NCBI GenBank assembly: GCA_964035545.1
Contig: OZ037768.1
Span: 17,033,875 to 17,097,874 of the forward strand
DNA from: Bugula neritina
Taxonomy: Eukaryota; Animalia; Bryozoa
Reading direction: 5' to 3'
Length of the DNA: 64,000 nt
Shown: positions 11,281-44,963 of the stretch, piece by piece
Layout of the letters: every line of letters begins with the position of its first letter
Position numbering within the stretch: position 1 is the stretch's first letter
The notes under the pieces: generated by a model
Database searches by the model: none
Told to the model about the DNA's origin: nothing
Seen by the model: only the letters and a program-made list of their open reading frames with translations
Translations under genes and position numbers: made by a program

Positions 11281-11657
11281 GTAAGTATTCATCTAATTAA
11301 TTCACCCATATTGCTTTTATCTCTATAAGAATATCTTGCATTAATTTTTTTGAAGCAAGTGTTTCGCAATATTATACAAAAAATATTATATAGAAACATG
11401 AGTTTAAAATATTATGGATTTTGATATTAATTGAATTAATATATGCTTTTTAAAAAACCAACCTCCAGTTACTTACAGTCATCATTTCTTTTTAATGCAA
11501 TTTTTCTAAGATTTTCTTATTGAAACAACATTAACTATTTATTTTGAAAAAATTCATCAGATTAATTATTTACAAGCTTTTTTTTGTTAAATGATGAGAT
11601 TATATCATTTAGTTTTAAATTTATAAGCATATGTAATATATCATTTGTAGAGTAAAG

Positions 11658-14600
11658 ATGAAGGGGGACTTAGAGTATGCAGGACATGCTCATTCTAGCA
11701 AAGAATCAGACCGAAGGTCACCTGTGATATCAGGACTTGGAGTTATTGCTATCACAGGTTTACTCATTACAGTAACCACAGCTGGTACTATATTCGGAGT
11801 TCATCTACTCAACAGAATTGATAATCTACAGGTAAGTTTTTCCTTTTGATAATAAAAAAATTGAAGTAATAAAGACTTTTATTCAAGATATTACCTAAAT
11901 AAAACATTTTTACAGCTGACATTAAAAATAACTTTACAACCAATTAAAGCATCACTTAACTGACAACATGCCCAAATATGCTCATAATTAATGCAGGTAT
12001 TGGAATCTCAAGTTTCCCAATTGCAGAGCGAGAATCTTGAACTGAAAGCCAAAGTTGCAGAACATGACTTGAAAATATCCAAAATTGAGGACAATCCCAG
12101 AGCAATCTATGCTACTGACAGCAAACTAACCAGAAGGAAGAGATCAGCCAGTGGTACAATTGACTACGGCTACACTGATGACAGACACAAGTATGCCTAT
12201 GGAACAGGTGGCGGAGGTATGTTTGCTGCCCTAAACATTTTCTAATATGGCACATCATCCAACAGCAATTTCGGTAATCCGACAAAACTTCTTGTGGTAT
12301 TTAAATGAATAGTGTTATTGAGAGTGTGCAAATTTTTACCATATACTCAACTAATTTTATGATTTTAAATTTTATTAGCATGCGCCTGCCCAGCTGGTCC
12401 ACAAGGTCCCCCAGGTCCTCCAGGTCCCAAAGGAGACAGAGGAGATGCTGGTAGACCAGGTTACAATGGTCAACCAGGTCCAGTTGGAGCCACTGGTACA
12501 GCTGGAGTTGGTCTCAAAGGACAAAGAGGTGCCACTGGTTCCACTGGTGTTCGAGGACAAGGATCTGTTGGTGCACCAGGATATGATGGTAAAGATGGTC
12601 TGCCTGGAGTACCTGGTAGAGATGGAGATACCGGCCCAATGGGAGCACCTGGTGTTCCAGGATATGATGGTAAAGATGGAGCTCCAGGACTACCTGGTCA
12701 AGATGGTAACAATGGTTTGCCTGGACGAGATGGTGTTGATGGTCAAGATGGAGAGCCAGGAGCTCGAGGATTACCTGGATATGATGGTAAAGATGGAGCT
12801 CCAGGCCCACAAGGCTTGCCAGGACGACAAGGTGAACGAGGATTTGATGGTCAACCAGGAGCAGCCGGAAAAGATGGTGCTCCAGGACCAGCTGGACCTC
12901 AAGGTGCTCCCGGAAAAGATGGTACCGATGGTCGACATGGTACAGATGGAAACCATGGTAATGATGGGCAAGATGGACAACCAGGCCAACCAGGAGAACC
13001 CGGACCACAAGGTCAACCAGGACCACAAGGAGGCCGAGGTCATCCAGGAAGAGATGGATCTGATGGTCAACCAGGAGAGCCTGGCAGAGATGGAGTTGAT
13101 GGAGCTCCAGGAGCACCAGGATATGATGGACAAGATGGACAACCAGGACCTTCAGGTCAACCAGGACCACAAGGAGCACCCGGTGAGCGTGGACAAGCAG
13201 GAGCACCAGGAAGAGATGGTGTGGATGGCGCACCAGGTCAGCCAGGAGAAAGAGGATCACAAGGTTCAGCCGGAAGAGATGGAGTTGATGGCCAACCAGG
13301 CCCAGCAGGTAGAGATGGTGTTGATGGCAAACCAGGTGCACCTGGATTTGATGGACAAGATGGTCAGCCAGGACCAGCTGGTCAACCAGGCCAGCCTGGC
13401 TCTCGTGGTGATCAAGGCCCTGCTGGTGCTCCAGGTAGAGATGGAGTTGATGGTCAGCCAGGACAAATAGGCCAAACTGGTGCTCCAGGACAACGTGGTG
13501 AACCAGGAGCACAAGGAGCATCAGGAAGAGATGGCAGTGATGGTCAACCAGGACAACGCGGACCAGCAGGCGCACCAGGTTTAGATGGACAAGATGGTCA
13601 ACCAGGAACACCAGGACAAGCAGGACAACAAGGAGCTGTGGGACCACAAGGAGCTCCAGGACCTCAAGGTGCACCTGGTGCACCTGGAGTAGCAGGAGCT
13701 GATGGATTTGATGGACAAGATGGTCAACCAGGACAAACTGGTGCACCTGGGCAAAGAGGAGAAGCTGGACAACCAGGGGCTGCAGGTAGAGATGGTATTG
13801 ATGGAGCACCAGGACAGCCAGGAAGAGATGGAGTTAATGGTCAGCCAGGACAGCAAGGAGCACCTGGACAAAGAGGACAAGATGGAGCACCTGGACAAAT
13901 TGGTGCACCAGGACAGCAAGGAGCACCAGGAGCACAAGGAGCACCAGGTCAACGAGGACAACAAGGAGCATCTGGAAGCCCTGGAAGAGATGGCAGTGAT
14001 GGTCAAAATGGTCAACCAGGACAACAAGGAGCACCAGGTCAACCTGGTCAAGCAGGTGCTCCAGGACAAGTTGGAGCTCCTGGTCAACAGGGAGCACCAG
14101 GACAACAAGGACAGCCAGGATCACAAGGTGCACCAGGCCAAAGAGGTCAAGCTGGAGCACCAGGACAAGCTGGAGCAGCTGGACAGCCAGGAGCTGCTGG
14201 TCAACCAGGTAGAGATGGTGCTGCTGGACAACCAGGACAACAAGGTGCACAAGGTCAACCAGGTACTCCAGGACAAGCTGGTGCACCAGGTCAATCTGGA
14301 GCACCAGGTCAACAAGGTGCTGCAGGCGCTCCAGGAGCACCCGGACAGAGAGGTCAAGCTGGGCAACCAGGCACAGCTGGACAAGCCGGAGCACCAGGAC
14401 AAGTCGGAGCACCAGGACAAGCTGGAGCACCAGGACGAGATGGACAGGCAGGCGCTCGAGGACAAGCAGGAGCAGCTGGTAGAGATGGAAACAATGGAGC
14501 ACCTGGAGCACCAGGTAGAGATGGCAGCGATGGACAGCCAGGTCAGCCAGGAACATCAGGAGCACCTGGAACCCCAGGCCAACAAGGAGCACCTGGTCAA

Positions 14601-17600
14601 CAAGGAGCACCAGGCACACCAGGCCGAGATGGAGCTGCTGGTCAACCCGGTCAACAAGGAGCACCAGGACAAAGAGGTCAAGCTGGAGCACCAGGACAAG
14701 CTGGAGCAGCTGGACAGCCAGGAGCTGCTGGTCAACCAGGTAGAGATGGTGCTGCTGGACAACCAGGACAACAAGGAACACCAGGACAGGCTGGAGCACC
14801 AGGGCAAGCTGGAGCACCAGGACAACAAGGAGCACCTGGCCAACGTGGTCAAGCTGGATCTCCAGGACAGGCAGGAGCAGCTGGTCAACCAGGCGCTGCT
14901 GGACAACCAGGAAGAGATGGTGCCGCTGGTCAACCAGGTCAACAAGGTGCAGCAGGACAACCAGGTCAAGCTGGTGCCCCAGGACAACGAGGCCAAGCAG
15001 GAGCACCCGGTCAACAAGGAGCACCAGGTACACCAGGAAGAGATGGGGTTGCTGGCCAACCTGGCCAACAAGGAGCACCAGGACAAAGAGGACAAGCTGG
15101 AGCACCAGGTCAAGCTGGAGCACCAGGACAAGCTGGAGCACCTGGTCAAGCCGGACAAGCAGGTCAACAAGGGGCACCTGGTCAACAAGGAGCACCAGGC
15201 ACACCAGGCCGAGATGGCGCTGCTGGTCAACCAGGACAACAAGGAGCACCTGGACAAAGAGGTCAAGCCGGATCACCAGGACAAGCTGGAGCAGCTGGAC
15301 AACCAGGAGCAGCTGGTCAACCAGGTAGAGATGGTGCAGCTGGACAACCAGGACAGCAAGGAGCTCCAGGACAGGCTGGAGCACCAGGACAAGCTGGAGC
15401 ACCAGGACAACAAGGAGCACCTGGACAAAGAGGCCAAGCTGGAGCCCCAGGTCAAACTGGAGCAGCTGGACAACCAGGTGCTGCTGGACAACCAGGAAGA
15501 GATGGTGCTGCTGGTCAACCGGGTCAACAAGGTGCAGCAGGACAAGCTGGAGCACCAGGACAAGCTGGAGCTCCTGGTCAAGCTGGAGCACCAGGTCAAC
15601 GAGGACAAGCTGGAGCACCAGGTAGAGATGGTAGCAATGGTCAACCAGGTGCTGCCGGAAGAGATGGAGCACCTGGTCAACAGGGAGCACAAGGTCAACC
15701 TGGTACACCAGGTCAAGCTGGAGCACCAGGTCAACGTGGCGCTGCAGGCACACCAGGACAAGCAGGAGCACCTGGACAGGCTGGAGCACAAGGAGCACCC
15801 GGTCAAAGAGGTCAAGCTGGAGCACCAGGTCAACAAGGAGCAGCTGGACAACCAGGTGCTGCTGGACAACCAGGAAGAGATGGTGCTGCTGGTCAACCAG
15901 GTCAGCAAGGCGCAGCAGGACAGCCAGGTACTCCAGGCCAAGCTGGAGCTCCTGGTCAAGCTGGAGCACCAGGACAACAAGGACAAGCAGGTGCACCAGG
16001 ACAAGCTGGAGCCCCTGGTCAATCTGGAGCACCAGGTCAAAGAGGAGCAGCTGGACAACCAGGTGCTGCTGGTCAACCAGGAAGAGACGGTGCAGCTGGT
16101 CAACCAGGTCAACAAGGAGCACCAGGACAGAGAGGTCAAGCTGGAGCACCAGGACAAGCTGGAGCAGCTGGACAGCAAGGAGCACCCGGAGCACCAGGTA
16201 GAGATGGTGCAGCTGGTCAACCTGGTCAACAAGGAGCAGCTGGTCAACCAGGAACTCCAGGACAAGCAGGAGCACCAGGTCAACGTGGCGCTGCAGGTAC
16301 ACCAGGACAAGCAGGAGCACCAGGACAACAGGGAGCACAAGGTGCACCTGGAAGAGACGGAAACAACGGGCAACCTGGTCAACAAGGAGCTCAAGGACAA
16401 GCTGGAGCACCTGGTCAACAAGGAGCACCAGGCACACCAGGCCGAGATGGAGCTGCTGGTCAACCCGGTCAACAAGGAGCACCAGGACAAAGAGGTCAAG
16501 CTGGAGCACCAGGACAAACTGGAGCAGCTGGACAACCAGGTGCTGCTGGTCAACCAGGTAGAGATGGTGCAGCTGGACAACCAGGACAGCAAGGAGCTGC
16601 AGGTCAAGCTGGAGCACCAGGACAAGCTGGAGCACCAGGACAACAAGGAGCACCAGGCCAAAGAGGTCAAGCAGGAGCACCAGGTGCAGCAGGACAAGCC
16701 GGAGCTCCAGGAAGAGATGGTGCCGCAGGACAACCAGGTTCTGCCGGTCAGCCAGGTAGAGATGGTGCTGCTGGTCAACCAGGACAACAAGGCGCAGCTG
16801 GTCAACCAGGAACACCTGGTCAACAAGGTGCACCTGGTCAACAAGGAGCACCTGGTCAAAGAGGTCAAGCTGGTGCACCAGGACAAGCTGGAGCAGCTGG
16901 ACAACCAGGAGCTGCAGGTCAACCAGGAAGAGATGGATCTGCTGGACAACCAGGACAAGCTGGAGCACCAGGACAAAGAGGACAAGCTGGAGCACCAGGA
17001 CAAGCTGGAGCAGCTGGACAACCAGGAGCTGCAGGTCAACCAGGAAGAGATGGATCTGCTGGACAACCAGGACAACAAGGTGCACCAGGTCAAGCTGGCG
17101 CACCAGGACAACAAGGTCAAGCAGGTGCTCCAGGAAGAGATGGTGCTGCTGGACAGCCAGGAGCCCAAGGACAACCAGGAACACCAGGACAGCAAGGTGC
17201 CCCAGGTCAACGTGGACAAGCAGGTGCCCAAGGACAGTCAGGAGCACCAGGAGTTCCAGGTAGAGATGGTGCTGTTGGACAACCAGGACAACAAGGAGCC
17301 CCAGGAGCTCCAGGAAGAGATGGAGCTAACGGACAGAATGGACAACCTGGAGCCCAAGGCCAACCAGGAACACCTGGACAACAAGGTGCACCAGGATCAC
17401 CTGGCCGAGATGGCAACAATGGCCAACCTGGAACACCAGGTCAACAAGGAGCAGCTGGGCAAGCAGGAGCCCCAGGACAAGCAGGAGCACCAGGTCAACG
17501 TGGTGCTGCAGGCACACCAGGACAAGCAGGTGCACCAGGACAACAGGGAGCACAAGGCGCACCTGGAAGAGACGGAAACAACGGGCAACCTGGTCAACAA

Positions 17601-20600
17601 GGAGCTCAAGGACAAGCTGGAGCACCTGGTCAACAAGGAGCACCAGGCACACCAGGCCGAGATGGAGCTGCTGGTCAACCCGGTCAACAAGGAGCACCAG
17701 GACAAAGAGGTCAAGCTGGAGCACCAGGACAAACTGGAGCAGCTGGACAACCAGGTGCTGCTGGTCAACCAGGTAGAGATGGTGCAGCTGGACAACCAGG
17801 ACAGCAAGGAGCTGCAGGTCAAGCTGGAGCACCAGGACAAGCTGGAGCTCCAGGACAACAAGGAGCACCAGGCCAAAGAGGTCAAGCAGGAGCACCAGGT
17901 GCAGCAGGACAAGCCGGAGCTCCAGGAAGAGATGGTGCCGCAGGACAACCAGGTTCTGCCGGTCAGCCAGGTAGAGATGGTGCTGCTGGTCAACCAGGAC
18001 AACAAGGCGCAGCTGGTCAACCAGGAACACCTGGTCAACAAGGTGCACCTGGTCAACAAGGAGCACCTGGTCAAAGAGGTCAAGCTGGTGCACCAGGACA
18101 AGCTGGAGCAGCTGGACAACCAGGAGCAGCAGGTCAACCAGGTAGAGATGGCGCTGCTGGTCAACCTGGACAACGAGGAGCTGCTGGTCAACCAGGAACA
18201 CCTGGTCAAGCAGGCGCACCAGGTCAAGCAGGTGCACCTGGTCAACAAGGTCAAGCTGGATCACCAGGACAAGCTGGAGCACCTGGACAACAGGGAGCAC
18301 CAGGCACACCAGGACGAGATGGAGCTGCTGGTCAACCTGGTCAACAAGGAGCACCAGGACAGAGAGGTCAAGCTGGTTCACCAGGTCAAGCTGGAGCACC
18401 AGGACAGGCTGGAGCACCTGGTCAAGCAGGAGCACCAGGACAACAAGGCCAAGCTGGAGCACCAGGACAGGCTGGAGCACCAGGACAAGCAGGAGCACCA
18501 GGTCAAAGAGGTCAAGCTGGTACCCCAGGAGCAGCAGGTAACCCAGGAAGAGATGGTGCCGCCGGTCAACCTGGCCAACAAGGTGCCCCAGGACAACAAG
18601 GACAAGCAGGAGCACCAGGACAAGCAGGAGCACCAGGACAAGCAGGAGCTGCTGGCCGAGATGGCTCAAACGGTAGAGATGGTGCAGTTGGCCAACCTGG
18701 CCAACAAGGTGCACCAGGTCAACAAGGACAAGCAGGAGCACCCGGAGCACCTGGCCGAGATGGCAACACAGGAGCACCAGGAACACCTGGTAGAGATGGA
18801 GCAAACGGTCAAGCTGGAGCACCTGGACAACGAGGAGCCGCAGGACAGCCAGGTACCCCAGGACAAGCTGGAGCACCAGGACAAGCTGGCCAACAAGGCG
18901 CTCCAGGTCAAGCTGGAACACCCGGACAACAAGGTGCTGCTGGTCAACCAGGTAGAGATGGTGCTGCTGGACAACCAGGGCAACAAGGCGCAGCAGGTCA
19001 GACTGGAGCTCCAGGACAACCAGGTGCTGCTGGTAGAGATGGTGTTGCTGGTCAACCAGGACAAGCTGGAGCACCTGGACAAAGAGGTCAAGCTGGAGCA
19101 CCAGGACAAGCAGGAGCAGCTGGACAGCCAGGTGCTGCTGGTCAACCAGGTAGAGATGGTGCTGCTGGACAATCAGGTCAAGCCGGACCACAAGGAGCTC
19201 CTGGAACCCCAGGAAGAGATGGTGCAGCTGGTCAGCCAGGACAAGCTGGAGCACCAGGACAAAGAGGTCAAGCTGGAGCACCAGGACAAGCTGGAGCAGC
19301 TGGACAGCCCGGTGCTGCTGGTCAACCAGGTAGAGATGGTGCTGCTGGACAATCAGGTCAAGCCGGACCACAAGGAGCTCCTGGAACCCCAGGAAGAGAT
19401 GGTGCAGCTGGTCAGCCAGGACAAGCTGGAGCACCAGGACAAAGAGGACAAGCTGGAGCACCAGGACAAACAGGAGCAGCTGGACAACCAGGTGCTGCTG
19501 GTCAACCAGGTAGAGATGGCGCTGCTGGACAATCAGGTGCTGCTGGACGTGATGGCAACACAGGTGCTCCAGGTGCACCAGGCAGAGATGGTGCTCCTGG
19601 TCAACCAGGACAGCAAGGAGCTCCAGGACAAGCTGGAGCACCAGGACAAGCTGGAGCTCAAGGACAACAAGGTGCAGCTGGTCAAAGAGGACAAGCTGGT
19701 GCACCAGGACAAGCCGGTAGAGATGGAGCACCTGGTCAACCTGGTGCTGCAGGCAGAGATGGTGTGAATGGAAGAGATGGACAATCTGGACAGCCCGGTC
19801 AAGCTGGAGCACCAGGCCAAGCTGGTGCCCCAGGACAAGCAGGCTCAAGAGGACAAGCAGGTGCACCAGGTCAAGCTGGAGCACCAGGACAGGCTGGAGC
19901 ACCTGGACAACAGGGAGCACCAGGCACACCAGGACGAGATGGAGCTGCTGGTCAACCTGGTCAACAAGGAGCACCAGGACAGAGAGGTCAAGCTGGAGCA
20001 CCAGGACAAGCTGGAGCACCAGGACAAGCTGGAGCACCTGGTCAAGCAGGAGCACCAGGACAACAAGGTCAAGCTGGAGCACCAGGACAGGCTGGAGCAC
20101 CAGGACAAGCAGGAGCTGCAGGCAGAGATGGTGCTAATGGACAAGATGGAAGACAAGGAGCTCCAGGAAGAGATGGTGCTAATGGTCAACCAGGACAACA
20201 AGGTGCCCCAGGACAACAAGGACAAGCAGGAGCACCAGGACAAGCAGGAGCACCAGGACAACCAGGAGCTGCTGGCCGTGATGGCTCAAACGGAAGAGAT
20301 GGTGCCAATGGTCAACCTGGCCAACAAGGAGCCCCAGGACAACAAGGACAAGCAGGAGCACCAGGACAAGCAGGAGCACCAGGTCAAGCTGGAGCTGCAG
20401 GCAGAGATGGTGCTAATGGACAAGACGGAAGACAAGGAGCTCCAGGAAGAGATGGTGCCAATGGTCAACCAGGACAGCAAGGAGCTCAAGGAGCACCAGG
20501 ACAAGCAGGAGCCCCAGGACAAGCAGGAGCACCTGGTCAAGCTGGAGCTCAAGGAGCACCAGGACAAGCAGGATCACCAGGACAGGCTGGTGCACCTGGA

Positions 20601-22769
20601 CAAGCCGGAGCACCAGGACAAGCAGGCGCTCCAGGACAACAAGGCCAAGCTGGAGCACCAGGACAAGCTGGAGCACCAGGACAAGCAGGAGCTGCAGGCA
20701 GAGATGGTGCTAATGGACAAGATGGAAGACAAGGAGCTCCAGGAAGAGATGGTGCTAATGGTCAACCAGGACAACAAGGTGCCCCAGGACAACAAGGACA
20801 AGCAGGTGCACCAGGACAAGCAGGAGCACCAGGACAACCAGGAGCTGCTGGCCGTGATGGCTCAAACGGAAGAGATGGTGCCAATGGTCAACCTGGCCAA
20901 CAAGGTGCCCCAGGACAACAAGGACAAGCTGGAGCACCAGGACAAGCAGGAGCACCAGGTCAACCTGGAGCCGCAGGCAGAGATGGTGCTAATGGACAAG
21001 ATGGAAGACAAGGAGCTCCAGGAAGAGATGGTGCCAATGGTCAACCAGGACAGCAAGGAGCTCAAGGAGCACCAGGACAAGCAGGAGCTCCAGGACAAGC
21101 AGGAGCACCAGGACAACATGGCCAAGCTGGAGCACCAGGACAAGCTGGAGCACCAGGACAAGCAGGTGCAGCTGGACCAGCAGGTTCACCAGGACAACAA
21201 GGAGCACCTGGTGCCCCTGGTAGAGATGGAGTCAATGGCCAAAATGGTCAACAGGGCGCACAGGGAGTTGCTGGACAACCTGGTGCACCAGGTCAAGCAG
21301 GTGCAGCAGGACAACCTGGTACTCCAGGACAAGCAGGAGCACCTGGTCAAGCAGGACCAGCTGGAGCACCAGGACAAGCAGGAGCACCTGGCCAAGCAGG
21401 ACCAGCTGGAGCACCAGGACAACACGGAGTTGCTGGTGCCCCAGGAAACGCTGGAAGAGATGGCGTTAATGGACAAAATGGTCAAGCTGGTGCACAAGGT
21501 CAACCTGGACCAGCTGGACCAGCTGGAGCTCCTGGTAGAGATGGAGTCAATGGTGCCCCTGGACATCCAGGAAGTAATGGCGCACCAGGTGTTCCAGGAA
21601 GAGATGGTGTAAATGGACAAGCAGGAGTTAACGGACAACCAGGAGCACAAGGACCAGCTGGAGCACCAGGAAGCAATGGTGTTAATGGCCAGCAAGGAGC
21701 TCCAGGACCTGCTGGAAGAGATGGCAATCCTGGTGCACCAGGACGAGATGGCGCTAACGGACAAGCTGGACCTGCTGGACCCGCAGGTGCTAATGGACAA
21801 AATGGTGCCGCAGGCCGTGATGGAAATCCAGGTCCAGCAGGACCTGCAGGACAGCCTGGAGCACCAGGAGTTAATGGACAGAATGGACAAGATGGTCTTC
21901 CAGGAGTACCTGGTAGAGATGGAGTCAATGGTCAATCAGGTCAAAGAGGAGCCCAAGGACAACGAGGAGATACTGGAGCACCAGGACCTCAAGGTGCTGC
22001 AGGTGCACCAGGCCAGCATGGTGCCCCAGGTAGAGATGGAAATACTGGAGCACCAGGAAATGATGGAGCTCAAGGAGCACCAGGAGTACCAGGATATGAT
22101 GGTCAAGATGGACAACCAGGACAGCAAGGAGCACCTGGACCACAAGGTCCTCAAGGTAACTCTGGTCCAGCAGGACCTGCAGGACGAGATGGTCAAAATG
22201 GAGCACCAGGAGTACCAGGATATGATGGTCAAGATGGTAGACCCGGCCCACAAGGAGCACCTGGACCACAAGGAGCACGAGGAAACACAGGGCAAGCAGG
22301 GGCACGTGGTAGCGATGGCAAAGATGGCGCACCTGGTGTACCAGGATATGATGGCCAGCCAGGAGCCAACGGTGAACGTGGACCCGCAGGACCTGCAGGA
22401 CGAGATGGTAATCCAGGAGCACCAGGACACGATGGTGCACCAGGCGATGCTGGAGCACCCGGAGTAGATGGTGCACCTGGAGTGCCCGGAAGAGATGGCT
22501 ATGATGGACTACCAGGAAAAGATGGTGAACGAGGACCAGCAGGACCAGCAGGAGCAGCTGGCCATGATGGCAGACCAGGACCCCAAGGAGCACCAGGTGT
22601 TGATGGAGTAGATGGCAAAGATGGTTTACCAGGATTTGATGGACTACCAGGAGCACCTGGTCTAGATGGTGTGGATGGTGCACCAGGCCAAACTGGCGCC
22701 ACCGGACCAATCAGAATTATCGGCAAACCAGATCCAAATGCAGTAGGCGGTTATGCCAAAAGAAGATAA
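11658..22769 (+). CDS. Giant type II membrane-anchored, furin-released collagen A (cuticle-collagen-like, about 3594 aa, Ala/Gln-rich helix)
   Basis: Coding exons 11658-11831 ([38 protein letters not shown]..), 11997-12216 (coiled coil [31 protein letters not shown], furin site RRKR, DYGY..KYAYG) and 12379-22769 (ACACPA, Gly-X-Y, tail [21 protein letters not shown]). Intron phases 0 and 1 join in frame; total 10785 nt. The ORF-track start at 12639 is an internal Met. Confidence 0.92.
16260..18165 (+). repeat. Internal near-identical duplication within collagen A (about 16260-16950 repeated at about 17475-18165; offset 1215 nt)
   Basis: Marker gaagagacggaaacaacggg at 16351 and 17566; the flanking ~0.7 kb matches with few substitutions. 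Confidence 0.85.
19050..19535 (+). repeat. 180-nt (60-aa) tandem repeat within collagen A
   Basis: Blocks starting at 19141 and 19321 are nearly identical (gtcaaccaggtagagatggtgctgctggacaatcaggtcaagccggaccacaagg...). Confidence 0.85.
20050..21110 (+). repeat. Higher-order tandem repeat within collagen A (279+297 = 576 nt period)
   Basis: The [12 protein letters not shown]-coding marker ggcagagatggtgctaatggacaaga recurs at about 20121, 20400, 20697 and 20976. Confidence 0.8.
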
Positions 22770-23039: not shown

Positions 23040-23045
23040 AATAAA
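23040..23045 (+). terminator. Putative polyadenylation signal of collagen A
   Basis: First AATAAA downstream of the stop at 22769. Confidence 0.55.
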
Positions 23046-29153: not shown

Positions 29154-29186
<33 letters not shown>

Positions 29187-34631: not shown

Positions 34632-34729
34632 CCAATCAGCTAAAACCACCAATCAGCAGCCAACAAATCGAATTCGAGGTTTGGTCAAGAGAGTATAAAA
34701 CAGCTGTGTAATCAAGATACTTCAGATTC
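34632..34729 (+). promoter_or_regulatory. Putative core promoter of collagen B (two CCAAT boxes, TATA, Inr-like)
   Basis: CCAATCAGC at 34632 and 34649; TATAAAA at 34694; TCAGATTC with its A at 34724, 30 nt after the TATA start. Confidence 0.65.
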
Positions 34730-34797
34730 TCTCCTCTGAATTTCAAAGAAGAGAGTTCCAGAATATCATCTTCTCCATCTGTAACACTACACAGAGG
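34724..34797 (+). other. Putative non-coding first exon of collagen B
   Basis: Runs from the Inr-like site to the donor GG|GTAAGC at 34798; acceptor TTTGTAG ends at 35340. Confidence 0.55.
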
Positions 34798-35347
34798 GTA
34801 AGCATGGACTTTTTTCACTATCTGGGAGAGTTAATATAAACCTGGTTGTAGATAATATAATATTAGCTATCTTTAGGTTTATTAATCAAGAAAAGTCAAA
34901 TAAAATTTAGTCAATTTATTTTCATGAGTTGAAACAAATATTTGAAATTTAACTTGATGGTTAAAAAAGAATAATTTTTTAAAGGGTAATATGAAAATAT
35001 TATTAGTAAAATCATACACTTGCTTATTTATTCTACACTCAAAAACTTGTTTTTGACTTTATAGGAAACGTTTTGCTGAATTTTTTAAGCACTAGACTAC
35101 ATGGCTGAGTGTAGGAATTACCAAAATTAGCCAAAATTTTCAAATAGAACATTACTTTAGGAAAGACTAAAAATTTCTATAACCTTTTATTCCTTAAAAT
35201 TTCTAAGCTATTAAAAAACTATATGGCAGATTATTTAATGAATTTTATTATATACAAACAGTATTCTAAAATTCCACGTGAAATAAAATTATTAACTGCC
35301 ATTAGACAATTGTAATACTGATTGTATACTTGATTTGTAGAGTAAAG

Positions 35348-38300
35348 ATGAAGGGGGACTTAGAGTATGCAGGACATGCTCATTCTAGCAAAGAATCAGA
35401 CCGAAGGTCACCTGTGATATCAGGACTTGGAGTTATTGCTATCACAGGTTTACTCATTACAGTAACCACAGCTGGTACTATATTCGGAGTTCATCTACTC
35501 AACAGAATTGATGACCTGCAGGTATTTATTTCATATAGAATTATTTGCAATAGTTAATACATACATTTCAACTTGACATTCCTAAAACAAAAAAGAGAAA
35601 ATTCTGTAAATAATATGCTTATTGATAATTTCAATTTCTGTACATCTTTTAAACATTAATTTTAAATTAAATCTTGCGGGTAAGCAAACACAAAAATAAA
35701 GAGCGGACCTATAATGTTTTAGACAAGGAATATGGAATTAGAACTGAAGGTAGCATACAAAACGGATATTGAGCAGCAAAATGAGCGAATTAATAATTTG
35801 GAAAAGAAAACAACCGAACACCTGAGGAAAAGGAGAGCAAATTACGGCGATGAATATGGATATGCGGCTGGAAATGGCCCTGAATATGGAGGTAAGTAGT
35901 TGACTAGCAGAAACTAATAATCCTGAGTATATGTGCAATTTTCTATTTGATTAGCTATCTAAACTAACTTTTATATAAAACCAGAACTTTGGCTTAAGTC
36001 ACAGAATGTACTTATCATGGTGTTATTCAATTATTTTAGCTACAGGTTGCAGCTGCCCAGCTGGACCACCAGGTAGAGATGGCCCCAGAGGACCACCTGG
36101 ACCCAAGGGTGACCGTGGAGATGCAGGACGCCCAGGAAGCAATGGGGTACCAGGCAGAATTGGTGCTACTGGTGCATATGGTGCAAGAGGAGCTACTGGA
36201 GCAACTGGTGTTCGAGGTGTTGGTGTACCTGGAGAAGATGGTAGAGATGGAGTGCCTGGAAGAGTTGGATCAACCGGAGCTCCTGGAGTACCAGGTAGAG
36301 ATGGATATGATGGCACACCAGGACCAGTTGGCCAGCCAGGAGAACCAGGAAGAGATGGTGTTGATGGCAACCATGGCCGTGATGGAAACCACGGTAATGA
36401 TGGTGAAGATGGACGTCCAGGAGAACCAGGCAGACCAGGAGAGCCAGGAGAGCGAGGAGAACAAGGAAGCCCAGGCAGTCCTGGCAGAGATGGTTCCCCA
36501 GGATCACCTGGTTACGATGGTCAAGATGGAACTCCAGGTAGAGATGGATCACCAGGAGAAAGAGGACAAGATGGTCAACCTGGTCAAACAGGCGCACCTG
36601 GATCACCTGGATATGATGGACAAGATGGACAACCTGGTGAACCAGGAAGAGACGGTGAACCTGGAAGAGATGGGCAACCAGGTGAACGAGGACAAGATGG
36701 ACAGACAGGTGCTCCCGGTCAACGAGGAGAACCAGGAGTTTCAGGTTCACCAGGTCGAGATGGAGCACCAGGTGAGCGTGGACAAGATGGTGCACCTGGA
36801 TCACCAGGTGTACCAGGCTACGACGGACAAGATGGACAGCCAGGCGAACCAGGCAGAGATGGAGCACCAGGTGAACGTGGACAAGATGGAGCAGCAGGTG
36901 TGCCAGGCAGAGATGGATTCGATGGACAAGATGGACAACCAGGTGCACCAGGCAGAGATGGATCACCTGGAGAGAGAGGTCAAGATGGATCACCAGGTAG
37001 AGATGGAAATCCTGGTGAAAGAGGACAAGATGGAGCTCCAGGAGCACCAGGAGTACCAGGATTTGATGGGCAAGATGGACAGCCAGGAAGCTCTGGTAGA
37101 GATGGAGCACCAGGACAAAGAGGGGAGCCAGGAATTGATGGACAACCTGGCTCACAAGGAGCACCAGGAAGAGATGGATCTCAAGGAGCAAGAGGAGAAC
37201 CAGGACAGAGAGGTGAGCCAGGACAACGTGGAGAACCAGGAGCTTCAGGTAGAGATGGTTCACCAGGAGCACCAGGTAGAGATGGAACACCTGGAGATCG
37301 AGGTCAAGATGGCGCTCCAGGATCACCAGGAAGAGATGGTTTCGATGGACAAGATGGGGCTCAAGGAGCACCAGGCCAAAGAGGAGAGAGTGGACAGCCC
37401 GGCAATGATGGGAGACCCGGATCACCTGGAGAACGTGGACAAGATGGCGCTCCTGGTTCACCAGGAAGAGATGGATTTGATGGACAAGATGGGGCCCCAG
37501 GTGCTCCAGGAAGAGATGGATCTCAAGGACAAAGAGGAGAACCAGGACAGAGAGGTGAGCCAGGACAACGTGGAGAAGCTGGTACACCAGGAAGAGATGG
37601 GTCACCAGGATCCCCAGGTCAAGATGGTCAACCAGGTGCTCGAGGAAATGATGGCCAAGATGGCCAACCAGGATCACCAGGAAGAGATGGAGCTCCAGGA
37701 TTACGAGGAGAAGCTGGCCAACGAGGTGAGCCAGGGCAGCGTGGAGAATCAGGTAACCCAGGAAGAGATGGCTCACCAGGATCTCCAGGTCAAGATGGTC
37801 AACCAGGTGCACGAGGAAATGATGGGGCTCCAGGATCACCAGGAAGAGATGGGTCACAAGGAGCAAGAGGAGAACCCGGACAAAGAGGAGAACCAGGACA
37901 ACGTGGAGAGTCAGGTAACCCAGGAAGAGATGGCTCAACAGGATCTCCAGGCAGAGATGGAGCACCAGGTGAACGTGGGCAAGATGGTGCACCAGGTTCT
38001 CCCGGCCAAGATGGACAACCAGGTGCTCGTGGATTTGATGGACAAGATGGCCAAACAGGATCACCAGGTAGAGATGGAGCGCCAGGCTCAAGAGGTGAGC
38101 AAGGCCAACGTGGTGAACCTGGTACACCAGGAAGAGATGGGTCACCAGGATCTCCAGGTCAAGATGGTCAACCAGGTGCTCGAGGAAATGATGGCCAAGA
38201 TGGCCAACCAGGATCACCAGGAAGAGATGGAGCTCCAGGATTACGAGGAGAAGCAGGCCAACGAGGTGAACCAGGGCAGCGTGGAGAATCAGGTAATCCC

Positions 38301-41300
38301 GGAAGAGATGGCTCACCTGGATCTCCAGGTCAAGATGGTCAACCAGGTGCACGAGGAAATGATGGGGCTCCAGGTTCACCAGGAAGAGCTGGTTTTGATG
38401 GACAAGATGGGGCTCCAGGAGCACCAGGTAGAGATGGAGCACCAGGACAAAGAGGCGAACCAGGCCAACGTGGAGAGGCTGGCCAGCAAGGTCAATCTGG
38501 GCAACCAGGCCAAAGGGGAGAACGTGGAGAGCCTGGAACTGCCGGAAGAGATGGGTCACCAGGAGCACCAGGACAAACTGGAGCACCTGGAGACAGAGGA
38601 CAAGATGGAAACCCCGGAAGAGACGGTGCTCCAGGACAACGAGGACTGGATGGTAGTCCAGGTGCACCAGGTGCATCAGGATTTGATGGACAAGATGGTG
38701 CACCTGGAGCTCCAGGCAGAGATGGGTCACCTGGTGCAAGAGGAGAGCCTGGTCAAAGAGGTGAGCCAGGCCAAAGAGGTGAGCAAGGACAACGTGGAGA
38801 ACCAGGAACTCAAGGTAGAGATGGTGCATCTGGATCACCAGGTAGAGATGGTGCACCAGGAGAACGTGGACAAGACGGTGCTTCAGGAAGAGATGGCTCA
38901 CCAGGCGCCCCAGGACAAGATGGTCAACCAGGTGCACGAGGATTTGATGGTCAAGATGGACAACCTGGAGCACCAGGAAGAGATGGAGCTCCAGGATCAC
39001 CAGGACAAGATGGTCAGGCTGGTAACCCAGGTAGAGACGGATCACCAGGCGAGCGTGGACAAGATGGCGCTCCTGGATCACCAGGAAGAGCTGGTTTTGA
39101 TGGACAAGATGGGGCTCCAGGATCACCTGGAAGAGATGGATCTCCAGGCCAAAGAGGAGAAGCAGGACAAAGAGGTGAACCAGGACAACGTGGAGAAGCA
39201 GGAACACCAGGAAGAGATGGTTCACCTGGATCTCCAGGTAGAGATGGTGCAGCTGGTGAGAGAGGACAAGATGGTTCTCCAGGAGCACCAGGTTCATCAG
39301 GATTCGATGGTCAAGATGGTGCACCAGGAGCTCCAGGCAGAGATGGGTCACCTGGTGCTAGAGGAGAGCCAGGTCAAAGAGGAGAACCAGGTCAAAGAGG
39401 AGAACCTGGACAGCGTGGTGAGGCTGGCAATGCAGGTAGAGATGGTGCTCCAGGCAGAGATGGAGCAGCTGGAGAACGTGGACAAGATGGAAATCCTGGA
39501 AGAGATGGTGCTCCAGGACAACGAGGACTGGATGGTAGTCCAGGTGCACCAGGTGCATCAGGATTTGATGGACAAGATGGTGCACCAGGAGCTCCAGGCA
39601 GAGATGGGTCGCCTGGTGCTCGAGGAGAACCAGGTCAACGAGGTGAGCCAGGTCAAAGAGGCGAGCCAGGACAACGCGGAGAACCAGGAACTCAAGGTAG
39701 AGATGGTTCACCAGGAGCAGCAGGTAGAGATGGCGAACGAGGTGAGCGTGGACAAGACGGTGCTTCAGGATCACCAGGAAGAGATGGTGCACCAGGATCA
39801 CCAGGTCAAGATGGTCAACCAGGTGCTCGTGGATTTGATGGTCAAGATGGAGCTCCAGGATCACCAGGAAGAGATGGATCTCCTGGATCACCAGGACAAG
39901 ATGGTCAACCAGGCGCACGAGGAAATGATGGCCAAGATGGCCAACCAGGATCACCAGGAAGAGATGGAGCTCCAGGATCTCCAGGACAAGATGGTCAACC
40001 AGGAGCCCGTGGATTTGACGGACAAGACGGTGCACCTGGAGCACAAGGTAGAGATGGATCACCTGGTGCAAGAGGTGAACCAGGCCAGCGTGGAGAACCC
40101 GGACAACGCGGAGAATCAGGAACACCAGGTAGAGATGGTGCACCTGGATCACCAGGAAGAGATGGAGCCCAAGGAGAACGTGGACAAGATGGTCAACAGG
40201 GTAACCCTGGAAGAGACGGAGCAACAGGCGACCGTGGACAAGATGGCGCTCCTGGATCACCAGGAAGAGCTGGTTTTGATGGACAAGATGGGGCTCCAGG
40301 ATCACCAGGAAGAGATGGAGCACCAGGACAAAGAGGAGAACCAGGCCAACGTGGAGAGCCTGGCCAACAAGGTCAATCTGGGCAACCAGGCCAGAGGGGA
40401 GAACGTGGAGAGCCAGGAGCTTCTGGAAGAGATGGATCACCAGGAGCACCAGGACAAACTGGAGCACCTGGAGATCGAGGACAGGATGGAGCACCTGGTA
40501 GAGATGGTGAACGTGGAGAACGAGGTCAAGATGGTGCTCCTGGATCACCAGGAAGAGCTGGTTTTGATGGACAAGATGGGGCACCAGGATCACCAGGAAG
40601 AGATGGAGCTCCAGGATCTCCAGGACAAGATGGTCAACCAGGTGCACGAGGATTTGATGGCCAAGATGGAGCACCAGGATCACCAGGAAGAGATGGAGCT
40701 TCAGGATCTCCAGGACAAGATGGTCAACCTGGTAACCCAGGTAGAGATGGAGCACCAGGTGAGCGTGGACAAGATGGCGCTCCTGGATCACCAGGAAGAG
40801 CTGGTTTTGATGGACAAGATGGGGCTCCAGGATCTCCAGGTAGAGATGGATCACCTGGTGTAAGAGGTGAACCAGGCCAAAGGGGAGAACCTGGCCAACA
40901 AGGCCAATCTGGGCAACCAGGTCAAAGAGGAGAACGCGGAGAAGCAGGAGCTCCAGGTAGAGATGGTTCACAAGGATCACCAGGCCAAACTGGATCACCC
41001 GGAGAACGTGGACAAGATGGCGCTCCTGGTTCACCAGGAAGAGATGGTTTTGATGGACAAGATGGAGCTCCAGGCTCCCCAGGAAGAGATGGATCTCCAG
41101 GAGCAAGAGGAGAACCAGGTCAACGTGGTGAGGCAGGACAATCCGGTAGAGATGGCTCACCAGGTCAGAGAGGTGAACCAGGACAAAGAGGTGAGCCTGG
41201 TCAAAGAGGTGAGCCAGGTCAGCGTGGTGAGGCTGGTGCACCAGGAAACCCAGGCCGTGACGGTTCACAAGGAGCACCTGGTAATGACGGATCACCAGGT

Positions 41301-44300
41301 GAACGTGGGCAAAGCGGATCTCCAGGTAGAGATGGATCTCCAGGATCACCAGGACAAGATGGTCAACCAGGAGCTTCTGGAAACCCAGGAAGAGATGGTG
41401 AAAATGGAAGAGATGGAGCACCTGGAAACCCAGGAAGAGATGGCTTTGATGGACAAGATGGAGCTCCAGGAGCACCAGGAAGAGATGGTTCCCAAGGAGC
41501 AAGAGGAGAACCAGGTCAACGCGGAGAGTCTGGAGCACCAGGCAGAGATGGTTCACAAGGATCACCAGGCCAAACTGGATCACCTGGAGAACGTGGACAA
41601 GATGGCGCTCCTGGTTCACCAGGAAGAGATGGTTTTGATGGACAAGATGGAGCTCCAGGCTCCCCAGGAAGAGATGGATCTCCAGGAGCAAGAGGAGAAC
41701 CAGGACAGAGAGGTGAGCCAGGACAACGTGGAGAACCAGGTAACTCCGGAAGAGACGGTGCACCTGGATCACCAGGTAGAGATGGAGCACCTGGTGATAG
41801 AGGACAAGATGGAGCACCAGGTTCACCTGGAAGAGATGGATCATCAGGATCTCCAGGCAGAGATGGCTCACCCGGAGCACCAGGACAAGACGGCCAACCA
41901 GGCGCAAGAGGAAATGATGGACAAGATGGACAGCCCGGTTCACCAGGAAGAGATGGTGCACCAGGATCTCCAGGTCAAGATGGTCAACCAGGTGCTCGTG
42001 GATTCGATGGTCAAGATGGAGCTCCAGGATCTCCAGGAAGAGATGGAGCACCAGGAGCAAGAGGAGAGGCTGGTCAGCGAGGAGAAGCAGGACAACGTGG
42101 AGAACCAGGTAACTCCGGAAGAGATGGTGCACCAGGATCACCAGGTAGAGATGGTACACCAGGTGATAGAGGACAAGACGGAGCACCAGGATCTCCCGGA
42201 AGAGATGGTTCACCAGGATCTCCAGGTCAAGATGGTCAACCAGGTGCTCGTGGATTCGATGGTCAAGATGGAGCTCCAGGATCTCCAGGAAGAGATGGAG
42301 CACCAGGAGCAAGAGGAGAGGCTGGTCAGCGAGGAGAAGCAGGACAGCGTGGAGAACCAGGTAACCCTGGAAGAGATGGTGCACCAGGATCACCAGGTAG
42401 AGCTGGAGAACGAGGTGAGCGAGGACAAGATGGAGCACCAGGCTCTCGTGGTCAAGATGGACAACCAGGTGCAAGAGGAAATGATGGACAAGATGGACAG
42501 CCCGGTTCACCAGGAAGAGATGGTGCACCAGGATCTCCAGGTCAAGATGGTCAACCGGGCGCTCGTGGCTTTGATGGTCAAGATGGAGCTCCAGGATCTC
42601 CAGGAAGAGATGGAGCACCAGGAGCAAGAGGAGAGGCTGGTCAGCGAGGAGAAGCAGGACAGCGTGGAGAACCAGGTAACTCCGGAAGAGATGGTGCACC
42701 AGGATCACCAGGTAGAGATGGTACACCAGGTGATAGAGGACAAGACGGAGCACCAGGATCTCCCGGAAGAGATGGTTCACCAGGATCTCCAGGTCAAGAT
42801 GGTCAACCAGGCGCTCGTGGCTTTGATGGTCAAGATGGAGCTCCAGGATCTCCAGGAAGAGATGGAGCACCAGGAGCAAGAGGAGAGGCTGGCCAGCGAG
42901 GAGAAGCAGGACAGCGTGGAGAACCAGGTAACTCTGGAAGAGATGGTTCACCAGGATCACCTGGTAGAGATGGAGCACCAGGTTCTCCTGGACAAGATGG
43001 ACAACCAGGTTCTCCTGGACAAGATGGACAACCAGGTGCCCGTGGATTTGATGGTCAGGATGGGGCTCCTGGATCACCAGGAAGAGATGGAGCACCAGGA
43101 GCAAGAGGAGAGGCTGGTCAGCGAGGAGAAGCAGGACAGCGTGGAGAACCAGGTAACCCCGGAAGAGATGGTGCACCAGGATCACCAGGTAGAGCTGGAG
43201 AACGAGGTGAGCGTGGACAAGATGGATCCCCAGGATCTTCAGGTAGAGATGGTTCTCCAGGAATCAGAGGCGAGCCAGGACAACGCGGAGAACCAGGTAC
43301 CCCAGGAAGAGATGGAGCCAATGGTGAACGTGGTCAAGATGGCGCACCAGGATCTCCAGGAGCTAGAGGATTTGATGGACAAGATGGTGCACCTGGATCA
43401 CCAGGTAGAGATGGTGCTCGAGGAAATGATGGACAAGATGGCGCTTCAGGATCACCAGGAAGAGATGGTGCACCAGGATCACCAGGTCAAGATGGTCAAC
43501 CAGGTGCACGAGGCTTTGATGGTCAAGATGGAGCTCCAGGATCACCAGGAAGAGATGGATCTCCCGGATCACCAGGACAAGATGGTCAACCAGGAGCACG
43601 AGGAAATGATGGCCAAGATGGCCAAACAGGATCACCAGGAAGAGATGGTGCACCAGGATCTCCAGGACAAGATGGACAACCAGGAGCACGAGGCTTTGAT
43701 GGACAAGATGGTGCACCAGGATCACCAGGTAGAGATGGATCACCTGGTGCAAGAGGTGAGCCAGGACAACGTGGTGAGCCAGGACAAAGAGGTGAGACTG
43801 GACAACAAGGTCAATCAGGATCACCAGGTAGAGATGGGGCTCGAGGAAATGATGGACAAGATGGCGCCCCAGGATCACCTGGAAGAGATGGTGCACCAGG
43901 ATCTCCAGGACAAGATGGACAACCAGGTGCACGAGGCTTTGATGGTCAAGATGGAGCACCAGGATCACCAGGAAGAGATGGATCTCCAGGATCACCAGGA
44001 CAAAGAGGTGAGACTGGACAACAAGGTCAATCAGGATCACCAGGTAGAGATGGGGCTCGAGGAAATGATGGACAAGATGGCACCCCAGGATCACCAGGAA
44101 GAGATGGTGCACCAGGATCTCCAGGACAAGATGGACAACCAGGTGCACGAGGCTTTGATGGACAAGATGGTGCACCAGGATCACCAGGTAGAGATGGAGC
44201 AAACGGAGAACGTGGTCAGGATGGAGCACCAGGTTCACCAGGCAGGGATGGAGCACCAGGACCAAGTGGATTTGATGGACAAGATGGTGCACCAGGAGCA

Positions 44301-44963
44301 CCAGGAAGAGATGGAGCACCAGGATCATCTGGTAGAGATGGCTCACCAGGAGAACGAGGTCAAGATGGTAACCCCGGATCACCTGGACGAGATGGAGCAC
44401 CAGGAGCACCAGGGGAACGAGGAGCTGATGGTTCACCTGGTAGAGATGGAACACCAGGATATGATGGACAAGACGGTCTTCCAGGAGCTCCTGGACAAGA
44501 TGGAGCACCTGGTTCACCTGGTAGAGACGGAGAACCAGGACAACGAGGATATGATGGAGCACCTGGAGCACCTGGAGCACCTGGAGAAAGAGGACAAGAT
44601 GGTCAATCAGGTAGAGATGGAGCAGCTGGCAACCCAGGACAAGATGGACAACCAGGCAGAGATGGTGCACCTGGACCATCAGGTTACGATGGCCAAGATG
44701 GTCAACCTGGTGAACCAGGTAGAGATGGAGCACCTGGGCCACGCGGTGAAACTGGAGCTCCAGGAAGGGACGGAGCACCTGGTCAACGTGGCGAAACAGG
44801 TCAACAGGGTACACGTGGACAAGATGGCATACCAGGAAGAGATGGAGCACCCGGCAAAGATGGCTATGATGGGCTACCAGGTCAGACTGGTGCTACAGGA
44901 CCTATTCGTATAGTGCAAGGGAATGGTAGTGGAGTTGCTGCACGTGGTGGCTACGGTCACTAG
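35348..44963 (+). CDS. Giant type II membrane-anchored, furin-released collagen B (about 3088 aa, Asp/Glu/Arg/Ser-rich helix)
   Basis: Coding exons 35348-35521 (same TM exon as A), 35723-35891 ([56 protein letters not shown]) and 36040-44963 (alternative in-frame acceptor giving 36046; ATGCSCPA, Gly-X-Y, tail [21 protein letters not shown]). Intron phases match gene A; total 9267 nt. The ORF-track start at 36006 is intronic. Confidence 0.92.
37581..38390 (+). repeat. 540-nt-offset internal duplication within collagen B
   Basis: Blocks starting at 37581 and 38121 (ggtacaccaggaagagatgggtcaccaggatc..) match over about 260 nt. Confidence 0.8.
41900..43220 (+). repeat. Higher-order tandem repeat within collagen B (units of 252, 315, 252, 225 nt)
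   Basis: Marker ccaggagcaagaggagaggctgg at 42051, 42303, 42618, 42870 and 43095. Confidence 0.8.

What the first reader, a model, noticed from the sequence alone, without database searches (positions are those of the whole stretch)
11643..11831. Transmembrane exon is nucleotide-identical between two otherwise diverged paralogs
Seen: 11651-11822 and 35341-35512 match at all 172 nt (7 nt of 5'UTR plus 55 codons, including every synonymous site), plus 8 nt of acceptor. Three differences appear only in the last 9 nt of the exon. The flanking introns, non-coding exons and next coding exon (73 vs 56 codons) are barely alignable. Inference: recent or recurrent gene conversion confined to one exon, perhaps favoured because both chains need the same membrane anchor for co-sorting or chain recognition. 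An RNA-level element in this exon is an alternative explanation.
Basis: partly seen in the sequence, partly recalled or inferred. Interest (0 to 1): 0.8.

Follow-up and report, generated by a model that had tools for sequence, protein, structure and literature searches.

The report
Gene conversion homogenised one collagen exon
Two neighbouring genes for micrometre-long, membrane-anchored collagens of a bryozoan share a letter-perfect 180-base stretch over their membrane-anchor exon because one copy was recently pasted over the other (gene conversion); this is a clean but ordinary example of a well-known process.

Summary
Window 11643-11822 and 35333-35512 are identical over 180 nt; three differences follow at 11823, 11825 and 11828. 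The next-longest exact match between the two loci is 26 nt. It is not an assembly artefact: contigs built from raw reads of the same lineage break exactly at the block and carry it at about twice the flanking depth, and a sibling lineage shows a 176-nt shared block.

The two genes are tandem, same-strand and expressed. Each encodes a type II membrane anchor, a coiled coil with a furin-type site, and one giant exon of about 1,147 or 983 Gly-X-Y triplets.

Elsewhere the paralogs are old: a 16-residue block identical in both has 13 synonymous differences in 48 nt. In eight bryozoan sequences the same exon has dS 0.8-2.0 and dN/dS about 0.1, with no covarying RNA structure. So the protein is constrained but the nucleotides are not.

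The best explanation is short-tract interlocus gene conversion, confined to the only stretch of usable homology and probably repeated since the two lineages split.

The scan noted similar exon-limited conversion elsewhere in this genome (s1-472672, s1-472151). Interest is low to moderate.

The parts
11643..11822 (+). Identical 180-nt block, copy in gene A (8 nt of acceptor, 7 nt of 5'UTR, 55 codons)
   Evidence: The raw-read contig of X1 spans exactly 11643-11822 at about twice the flank depth.
35333..35512 (+). Identical 180-nt block, copy in gene B
   Evidence: The sibling-lineage contig L026 matches 129 of 130 aligned bases of this exon.
11651..11831 (+). Gene A exon 1: ATG at 11658, 58 codons, phase 0. 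It encodes the cytoplasmic tail [12 protein letters not shown], a transmembrane helix and the start of the coiled coil.
   Evidence: An RNA contig of X14 joins 11831 to 11997 across a GT..AG intron. Kyte-Doolittle hydropathy peaks at 2.0 over residues 22-40.
35341..35521 (+). Gene B exon 1 (ATG at 35348)
   Evidence: A 974-nt RNA contig of X7 (depth 1508) joins gene B's 5' non-coding exon to this exon. A loose end GACCTGCAG+ACTAGAAATAT shows the exon 1 to exon 2 junction of gene B.
11997..12216 (+). Gene A exon 2: coiled coil, RRKR furin-type site, Tyr/Gly-rich linker (73 codons plus 1 base)
   Evidence: Spliced in the X14 RNA contig, which continues into the start of exon 3. Weak match to the TolA_bind_tri trimerisation family.
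35723..35891 (+). Gene B exon 2: coiled coil, RKRR site (56 codons plus 1 base); 42% identical to exon 2 of A
12379..22769 (+). Gene A exon 3: CxC knot, then 13+6+1128 Gly-X-Y triplets, short C-terminal tail and stop
36040..44963 (+). Gene B exon 3: CxC knot, then 18+965 Gly-X-Y triplets, short tail and stop
34694..34797 (+). Gene B promoter-proximal region: TATAAAA at 34694-34700 and a 5' non-coding exon ending at 34797 (donor GT at 34798). Its start was not mapped.
   Evidence: The loose end of the X7 RNA contig matches 34767-34796 with 2 mismatches, and matches L026 exactly.

Best explanation
Two tandem, same-strand paralogs lie about 23.7 kb apart. They encode giant type II membrane-anchored collagens that are probably shed by a furin-type protease, and they duplicated long ago. 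Their first coding exon was later homogenised by interlocus (non-allelic) gene conversion. The tract covers at least 180 nt and at most about 190 nt.

The tract is confined to this exon for a mechanical reason. Strong purifying selection on the anchor peptide has kept this exon the only stretch with enough nucleotide similarity for strand invasion and re-annealing. The flanking introns share nothing. Once identical, the block is an even better substrate, so conversion can recur.

The identical pair is present in two sibling lineages that differ by 5-10% at neutral sites. This favours conversion since their split over one old event.

Shown: the identity, its reality in raw reads, old divergence elsewhere in the genes, free synonymous change of this exon in other species, and expression and splicing of both genes. 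Inferred: the recombination mechanism, the homology-limited boundaries, recurrence, and direction (possibly A to B).
For: Synonymous contrast within the genes:
- Exon 1 has no difference in 55 codons.
- Exon 2 is 42% identical at the amino-acid level.
- The first 99 aligned codons of the helix are 71% identical at the nucleotide level, and only 40 of 72 conserved residues use the same codon.
- The invariant peptide [16 protein letters not shown] differs at 13 of 48 nt, all synonymous.
- The next-longest exact match is 26 nt.

Not an artefact:
- X1 read-derived contigs break exactly at the block, which has depth 199.6 against 94.3 and 75.3 in the flanks.
- The independent 2016 run X2, whose upstream intron differs at 50 bases plus 21 gap positions in 1,029 nt, has a shared 176-nt piece at depth 47.5 against 28.5.

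No nucleotide-level constraint:
- In contigs of other bryozoan-type animals, exon 1 has dS 0.78-2.0 against gene A and dN/dS about 0.1.
- Paralogs found in one sample or run differ at dS 0.75-2.4 (L010/L005, L007/L027, L024/L009).

Recurrence:
- Between the reference and the sibling lineage (L026), non-coding identity is 88-95% and dS is 0.05-0.10.
- With about 42 synonymous sites, 2-4 A-B differences per lineage would be expected without conversion since the split.
- Observed: none in the reference, and one in the sibling lineage (T>C at 35509, which explains why its shared piece stops at 11818).

Setting and precedent:
- Tandem, same orientation, 23.7 kb apart, and only two copies in the genome.
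- Precedent for short tracts and exon bias: mean human tract of 250 bp (10.1101/135152); introns impede conversion, and the tandem collagens col-12/col-13 evolve in concert (PMC3966223).
Against: The direction and number of events are not shown.

The argument for recurrence is only moderately strong. The Poisson probability of no difference is about 0.015-0.12 per lineage. Logan contigs can pop bubbles, so a private variant in one copy of the sibling lineage cannot be excluded.

I could not see the position of the one lineage-specific letter in the shared piece, because the table was cut. Whether both copies carry it rests on depth alone.

The co-occurring paralogs of other species come from metagenome-type samples and could belong to two species.

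Orthology of those sequences to A and B is unresolved.

The 8 intronic bases inside the block are a conserved acceptor context (L025 also has ATTTGTAG). They therefore do not prove that the tract was copied from DNA rather than from a cDNA.
Confidence: 0.85

Rival explanations
1. Selection at the nucleotide or RNA level (a structured or regulatory element inside the exon) keeps both copies identical without any copying.
For: The exon RNA folds somewhat better than shuffles (z = -2.4). A 7-bp hairpin, GAGUAUG..CAUGCUC, starting 16 nt after the A of the AUG, is invariant in 8 sequences, including four third-codon positions.
Against: Across species the exon has dS 0.8-2.0. The 10-bp hairpin of the B. 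neritina fold is not conserved. RNAalifold gives a covariation term of +0.3 and Rfam has no match. The small conserved hairpin covers 19 of 180 nt and cannot explain identity over the rest.
Confidence: 0.03
2. Assembly or polishing artefact: one copy was overwritten with the other during consensus building.
For: Short two-copy repeats do confuse assemblers. Two JGI metagenome contigs of the sibling lineage carry different deletions of about 50 nt inside this exon (L026; P0008).
Against: Read-derived contigs of X1 give one 180-nt node at double depth, flanked by gene A's unique sequence. An independent lineage (X2) shows the same. RNA contigs of A type (X14) and B type (X7) both contain the block without differences or gaps; X7 has one lineage-specific letter.
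Confidence: 0.02
3. One single old conversion (or an exon replacement templated by a cDNA) before the two B. neritina lineages split, after which the block stayed identical by chance and by slow synonymous change. There would be no ongoing process.
For: The left boundary (11643) and the three terminal differences are the same in both lineages. Between lineages the exon shows about 2 changes where about 3 are expected, so expectations are small numbers. The block nearly coincides with the exon, as a cDNA template would give.
Against: With neutral divergence of 0.05-0.10 between lineages, 2-4 A-B differences per lineage are expected; 0 and 1 are seen. The shared piece of the sibling lineage carries a lineage-specific letter at about 1.7 times the flank depth, which suggests that both copies have it. 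Identical boundaries are also expected if tracts are limited by homology. The tract stops 9 nt before the exon end, which a cDNA template does not predict.
Confidence: 0.1

Closest known systems
Concerted evolution of the tandem cuticle collagen genes col-12/col-13 of Caenorhabditis (reviewed in PMC3966223)
   Same: Tandem collagen paralogs from an old duplication, with coding sequence homogenised by interlocus gene conversion while the flanks are diverged.
   Different: There the whole ORF, including an intron, is 99.5% identical. Here only 180 nt of one exon is identical, and the collagen part is 55-78% identical.
Exon-restricted concerted evolution in the CEACAM family (PMC7042247, PMC2832619)
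   Same: A single exon is homogenised between otherwise diverged paralogs, which gives exon-specific tree conflicts.
   Different: In CEACAMs it is the ligand-binding N-domain exon, linked to host-pathogen selection. Here it is a membrane-anchor exon, and no selective reason is evident.
Non-allelic gene conversion as measured in human duplicates (10.1101/135152)
   Same: The tract size here (180-190 nt) fits a mean of 250 bp. Conversion slows as copies diverge, so conserved islands remain the substrate.
   Different: That is a genome-wide statistical estimate in a vertebrate; this is one locus in a bryozoan.
MACIT collagens XIII/XXIII/XXV and COL-99 (PMC4678570) and nematode cuticle collagens cleaved by BLI-4 (PMC10538796)
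   Same: The protein layout of the two genes: short N-terminal cytoplasmic tail, transmembrane helix, juxtamembrane coiled coil, dibasic furin-type site, collagenous ectodomain.
   Different: MACITs have a few hundred residues in interrupted helices and a conserved 34-residue C-terminus. Nematode cuticle collagens are about 300 residues long. These genes encode 965 and 1,128 uninterrupted triplets in single exons of 8.9 and 10.4 kb.

Membership tests
Interlocus (non-allelic) gene conversion / concerted evolution | A tract far more similar than the rest of the paralogs, with sharp boundaries | tested here: met
   180 of 180 nt identical, against flanks that cannot be aligned and 53-71% nucleotide identity in the other aligned coding parts.
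Interlocus (non-allelic) gene conversion / concerted evolution | Synonymous sites are homogenised in the tract but saturated elsewhere | tested here: met
   No synonymous difference in 55 codons. By contrast there are 13 in 16 codons of an invariant peptide, and only 40 of 72 conserved residues share a codon.
Interlocus (non-allelic) gene conversion / concerted evolution | The tract is not conserved at the nucleotide level in other species (identity is lineage-specific) | tested here: met
   dS 0.78-2.0 between gene A and seven other bryozoan-type exon 1 sequences. Paralogs sharing a sample differ at dS 0.75-2.4.
Interlocus (non-allelic) gene conversion / concerted evolution | Tree conflict: paralogs group by species for the tract and by gene for the rest | tested here: inconclusive
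   Both B. neritina lineages have identical pairs, but per-copy sequence of the sibling lineage is incomplete. Orthology of the other species' genes to A and B could not be resolved.
Interlocus (non-allelic) gene conversion / concerted evolution | Donor and acceptor are physically close, and tract length is in the usual range | tested here: met
   Same strand, 23,690 nt apart, only two copies in 216 Mb. The tract is 180-190 nt, against a mean of 250 bp in humans (10.1101/135152).
Conserved structured RNA element in the exon | A consensus structure supported by covariation across relatives, or a match to a known family | tested here: not met
   The covariation term is +0.3 kcal/mol, and most pairs are either invariant or broken. 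No Rfam match at E <= 1.
MACIT-type membrane collagens (for the genes that carry the exon) | Type II orientation with an N-terminal transmembrane helix, a juxtamembrane coiled coil and a furin-type site | tested here: met
   Hydropathy peak at residues 22-40 with RR on the N-terminal side. Heptad-rich exon 2 with RRKR or RKRR. Cleavage itself was not tested.
MACIT-type membrane collagens (for the genes that carry the exon) | Several interrupted collagenous domains and the conserved C-terminal 34 residues | tested here: not met
   After two (A) or one (B) early G-X-G breaks, the helices run for 1,128 and 965 triplets without interruption. The C-terminal tails are short and were not compared with MACITs. 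These genes work like MACITs at the N-terminus but should not be filed as members.

The most novel reading that the evidence does not exclude
The anchor exon is kept identical by recurrent conversion because selection favours it. On this reading both micrometre-long procollagens must present the same cytoplasmic tail and transmembrane helix. The tail is invariant as [10 protein letters not shown] and contains a DxE-type motif. The shared partner would be one export, sorting or shedding machinery, or the chains would form mixed trimers through the membrane helix. Conversion would then act as a maintenance mechanism for a shared module.
Probability: 0.1. Interest if true: 0.55.

Novelty: new member of a known kind. 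Interest (0 to 1): 0.3.

Why it matters
The finding itself is a textbook-quality case of homology-limited, exon-sized gene conversion between old tandem paralogs. It is useful as a marker of ongoing conversion in the Bugula neritina species complex. It is also a warning for gene trees, read mapping and assembly at this locus.

The larger value lies in the genes that carry the exon. They are expressed collagens of about 0.83 and 0.97 micrometres, each with a strongly conserved type II anchor, a coiled coil and a furin-type site. Relatives of this anchor peptide were found only in bryozoan-type contigs. That makes the anchor exon a specific probe for this family.

Tried and rejected
- **Own-genome search for more copies.** DNA and protein searches for further copies, or diverged copies, of the exon found only the two.
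- **Word search with the helix start.** Searching with the first 130 residues of the helix returned only generic long collagens, mostly vertebrate type VII. This reflects composition, not orthology.
- **Assigning other species' genes to A or B.** I tried the first 120 helix residues, an early helix break and the DGNHGNDG motif. The signals conflict, so I make no orthology claim and give direction only as a weak guess.
- **dS from protein-guided alignment.** Aligning the repetitive helix this way misaligned it. I replaced it with a nucleotide-guided alignment.
- **Pfam on exon 1.** No family matched.
- **Gene A's non-coding first exon.** No RNA contig in 6400-11650 revealed it.
- I kept the read-laying stretch (5,971 letters) out of the collagen exon as a precaution.

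Full report
**Observation**

The two stretches were read and compared base by base. Window 11643-11822 equals 35333-35512 at all 180 positions. The block is made of 8 nt of splice acceptor (ATTTGTAG), 7 nt of 5'UTR and 55 codons. The copies then differ at 11823, 11825 and 11828, and both end in CAG|GT.

A blastn run with 7-nt words between 12.7 kb and 13.4 kb of upstream and intron sequence finds nothing but the exon and its immediate surroundings. The next-longest exact match between the two loci is 26 nt. DNA and protein searches of the whole 216-Mb assembly find only these two copies.

**What carries the exon**

Each copy is the first coding exon of a three-coding-exon gene on the + strand.

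- Exon 1 has 58 codons. It encodes a short tail ([10 protein letters not shown]...RR), a hydrophobic helix with a hydropathy peak of 2.0 at residues 22-40, and the first turns of a coiled coil.
- Exon 2 (A 11997-12216, B 35723-35891) is heptad-rich. It holds RRKR or RKRR followed by a Tyr/Gly-rich linker.
- Exon 3 (A 12379-22769, B 36040-44963) opens with a CxC motif. It then runs as Gly-X-Y for 13+6+1128 triplets in A and 18+965 in B, up to a short tail and a stop.

RNA-derived contigs confirm the models.

- Run X14 joins exon 1 of A to exon 2 of A across a GT..AG intron and continues into exon 3.
- Run X7 has a deep contig (depth 1508) that joins a non-coding exon to exon 1. Its loose end matches 34767-34796 upstream of gene B, downstream of a TATAAAA at 34694-34700.
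- Another X7 contig shows the B-type exon 1 to exon 2 junction.

Both genes are therefore intact and expressed. The layout (type II anchor, coiled coil, furin-type site, collagen) is that of MACIT collagens (PMC4678570) and of nematode cuticle collagens cleaved by BLI-4 (PMC10538796). The helices here are roughly ten times longer and uninterrupted.

Earlier notes of this scan name the genome Bugula neritina. The assembly size (216,009,554 bases) matches the published 216.00-Mb assembly (PMC11480708). I did not verify the species otherwise.

**Is the block real?**

Logan contigs are built from raw reads without the assembly. In run X1 (same lineage, 99% of sampled words) the graph breaks exactly at the block.

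| X1 contig | Window span | Depth | Differences |
|---|---|---|---|
| A-flank contig | ends at 11672 | 94.3 | 0 |
| 180-nt contig | 11643-11822 | 199.6 | 0 |
| Next A-flank contig | starts at 11793 | 75.3 | 0 |

That is the signature of two identical copies in the reads, so a polishing artefact is excluded.

Run X2, from a 2016 study, belongs to a diverged lineage: its upstream intron differs at 50 bases plus 21 gap positions in 1,029 nt. It shows the same left break at 11643 and a shared piece 11643-11818 at depth 47.5, against 28.5 in the flank.

**How old are the paralogs elsewhere?**

- Exon 2 is 42% identical in protein.
- The first 99 aligned codons of the helix are 73% identical in protein and 71% in DNA. 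Only 40 of the 72 conserved residues use the same codon.
- The peptide [16 protein letters not shown] is identical in A and B, yet differs at 13 of 48 nt, all synonymous.
- The helices are built from different internal tandem repeats.

With this background, 55 identical codons in a row has a probability of about 1e-14 even if every residue were constrained.

**Constraint or copying?**

A profile-free search of 1.84 billion representatives with the 58-residue peptide, and a word search, found relatives only as short ORFs on contigs of bryozoan-type animals. I fetched their DNA.

Across eight sequences the peptide is strongly conserved (dN/dS about 0.1). Synonymous sites are close to saturation, with dS 0.78-2.0 against gene A.

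Pairs of paralogs found in one BioSample or one run differ in exon 1 as follows:

| Pair | Shared source | dS in exon 1 |
|---|---|---|
| L010 / L005 | same sample via L018 | 0.75 |
| L007 / L027 | SAMN08714533 | 1.4 |
| L024 / L009 | SRR25569781 | 2.4 |

These samples could hold more than one species, which is a caveat.

RNAalifold on the eight exons gives no covariation support (+0.3) and Rfam has no match. The single-sequence fold is only mildly better than shuffles (z = -2.4).

The nucleotides of this exon are therefore free to change. The identity in B. neritina is lineage-specific, which is what copying predicts and what constraint does not.

**Once or repeatedly?**

Contig L026 (JGI 3300002729) is collinear with window 20163-23793 and 29666-37788. 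It carries exactly the 5'UTR sequence seen in X7, so it represents the X2/X7 lineage.

Against the reference, its non-coding parts are 88-95% identical and dS in the collagen exons is 0.05-0.10. In the 130 nt of exon 1 it retains, it differs only by T>C at 35509. This explains why the shared piece of that lineage stops at 11818.

With about 42 synonymous sites, two copies evolving independently since the lineage split should differ at 2-4 sites in each lineage. The reference has none and the sibling lineage has one.

The shared piece of the sibling lineage also carries one letter that differs from the reference, at about 1.7 times the flank depth. This suggests that both copies have it. I could not see its position because the table was cut, and contig building can hide a bubble. 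I therefore rate recurrence as likely, not shown.

**Why only this exon?**

The introns share no usable homology, and the rest of the coding sequence has no exact match longer than 26 nt. Strand invasion and re-annealing need homology. Tracts therefore cannot extend beyond the block that protein-level selection has kept similar.

The review PMC3966223 makes the same point for introns. A tract of 180-190 nt fits the 250-bp mean estimated in humans (10.1101/135152). Identical boundaries in both lineages are expected under this view. No special selective reason is needed.

- The helices differ by 163 triplets, about 140 nm.
- A has an early break that B lacks.
- The coiled coil that would select chains has diverged.

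The 3' end of gene A's exon (GATAATCTACAG) equals that of another species' exon (L007), while B's GATGACCTGCAG is unique. This hints weakly at A as the donor.

**Comparison and verdict**

Exon-limited conversion is well known. Examples are the CEACAM N-domain exons (PMC7042247) and the tandem collagens col-12/col-13 (PMC3966223). Other readers of this scan noted it elsewhere in this genome (s1-472672, s1-472151).

This is a new, very clean member of a known kind. The genes themselves, giant anchor-bearing collagens with relatives found only in bryozoan-type contigs, are the more unusual item, but they lie outside the finding as given.

Exons were searched one by one by reference. 

Noticed in passing
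window 11651-22769 and 34694-44963: Two expressed tandem genes encode type II membrane-anchored collagens with a furin-type site, carrying 1,128 and 965 uninterrupted Gly-X-Y triplets (about 0.97 and 0.83 micrometres) in single exons of 10.4 and 8.9 kb. The N-terminus is built like MACITs or nematode cuticle collagens, but the helix is roughly ten times longer. Relatives of the anchor peptide were found only in bryozoan-type contigs.
   Followed up: partly
window 11658-11693 (and 35348-35383): The first 36 nt of the coding sequence are unusually conserved at synonymous sites in 8 bryozoan sequences. This includes an invariant 7-bp hairpin, GAGUAUG..CAUGCUC, starting 16 nt after the A of the AUG, whose loop third positions vary freely. 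It may be a translation-start or splicing signal.
   Followed up: no
window 11658-11687: The cytoplasmic motif [10 protein letters not shown] is invariant in all paralogs and species seen, apart from minor variants in P0009, P0010 and P0033. It contains D-x-E next to a tyrosine, reminiscent of di-acidic ER-export signals. This comparison is from memory and was not tested.
   Followed up: no
window 11997-12216 vs 35723-35891, with L007, L024, L027, L010: Exon 2 looks mosaic. The start of A's exon 2 ([18 protein letters not shown]) resembles L027 and L010, while its end (EDNP..Y..KLTRRKR) resembles L007 and L024. The start of B's exon 2 (TRNMELE) resembles L007. This may reflect older exchanges between paralogs.
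   Followed up: partly
L026:9240-9260 and protein P0008: Two JGI metagenome contigs of the sibling lineage carry different deletions inside gene B's copy of the exon: 53 nt in L026, and about 50 nt with a frameshift inferred from P0008. RNA of that lineage (X7) has the exon intact, so these are probably misassemblies at the two-copy repeat.
   Followed up: partly
window 23793-29666: A 5.9-kb stretch between the two genes is absent from the sibling-lineage contig L026, which is otherwise collinear. It is an insertion or deletion whose content I did not examine.
   Followed up: no
window 10580-10685 and about 6875: A short dispersed repeat reaches very high summed depth in all DNA runs (tens of thousands to about 220,000), with many loose ends. 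It is probably a high-copy mobile element fragment.
   Followed up: no
window 12950-12970 (A) and 36360-36400 (B): The motif DGNHGNDG is conserved in several family members but lies at different distances from the helix start: residue 190 in A, 107-113 in B, 138 in L010 and 92 in L005.
   Followed up: no
window 22026-22125 vs 36993-37091: This is the best alignment between the two collagen exons: 88% over 100 nt, against the usual 72-78%. It could be an older small conversion, or chance among 737 repeat alignments.
   Followed up: no
window 19035-19538, 43779-44198: Internal tandem repeats in both giant exons have periods that are multiples of 9 nt and are up to 96-97% identical. The two genes use different repeat units, which indicates recent independent expansion within each gene.
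   Followed up: no
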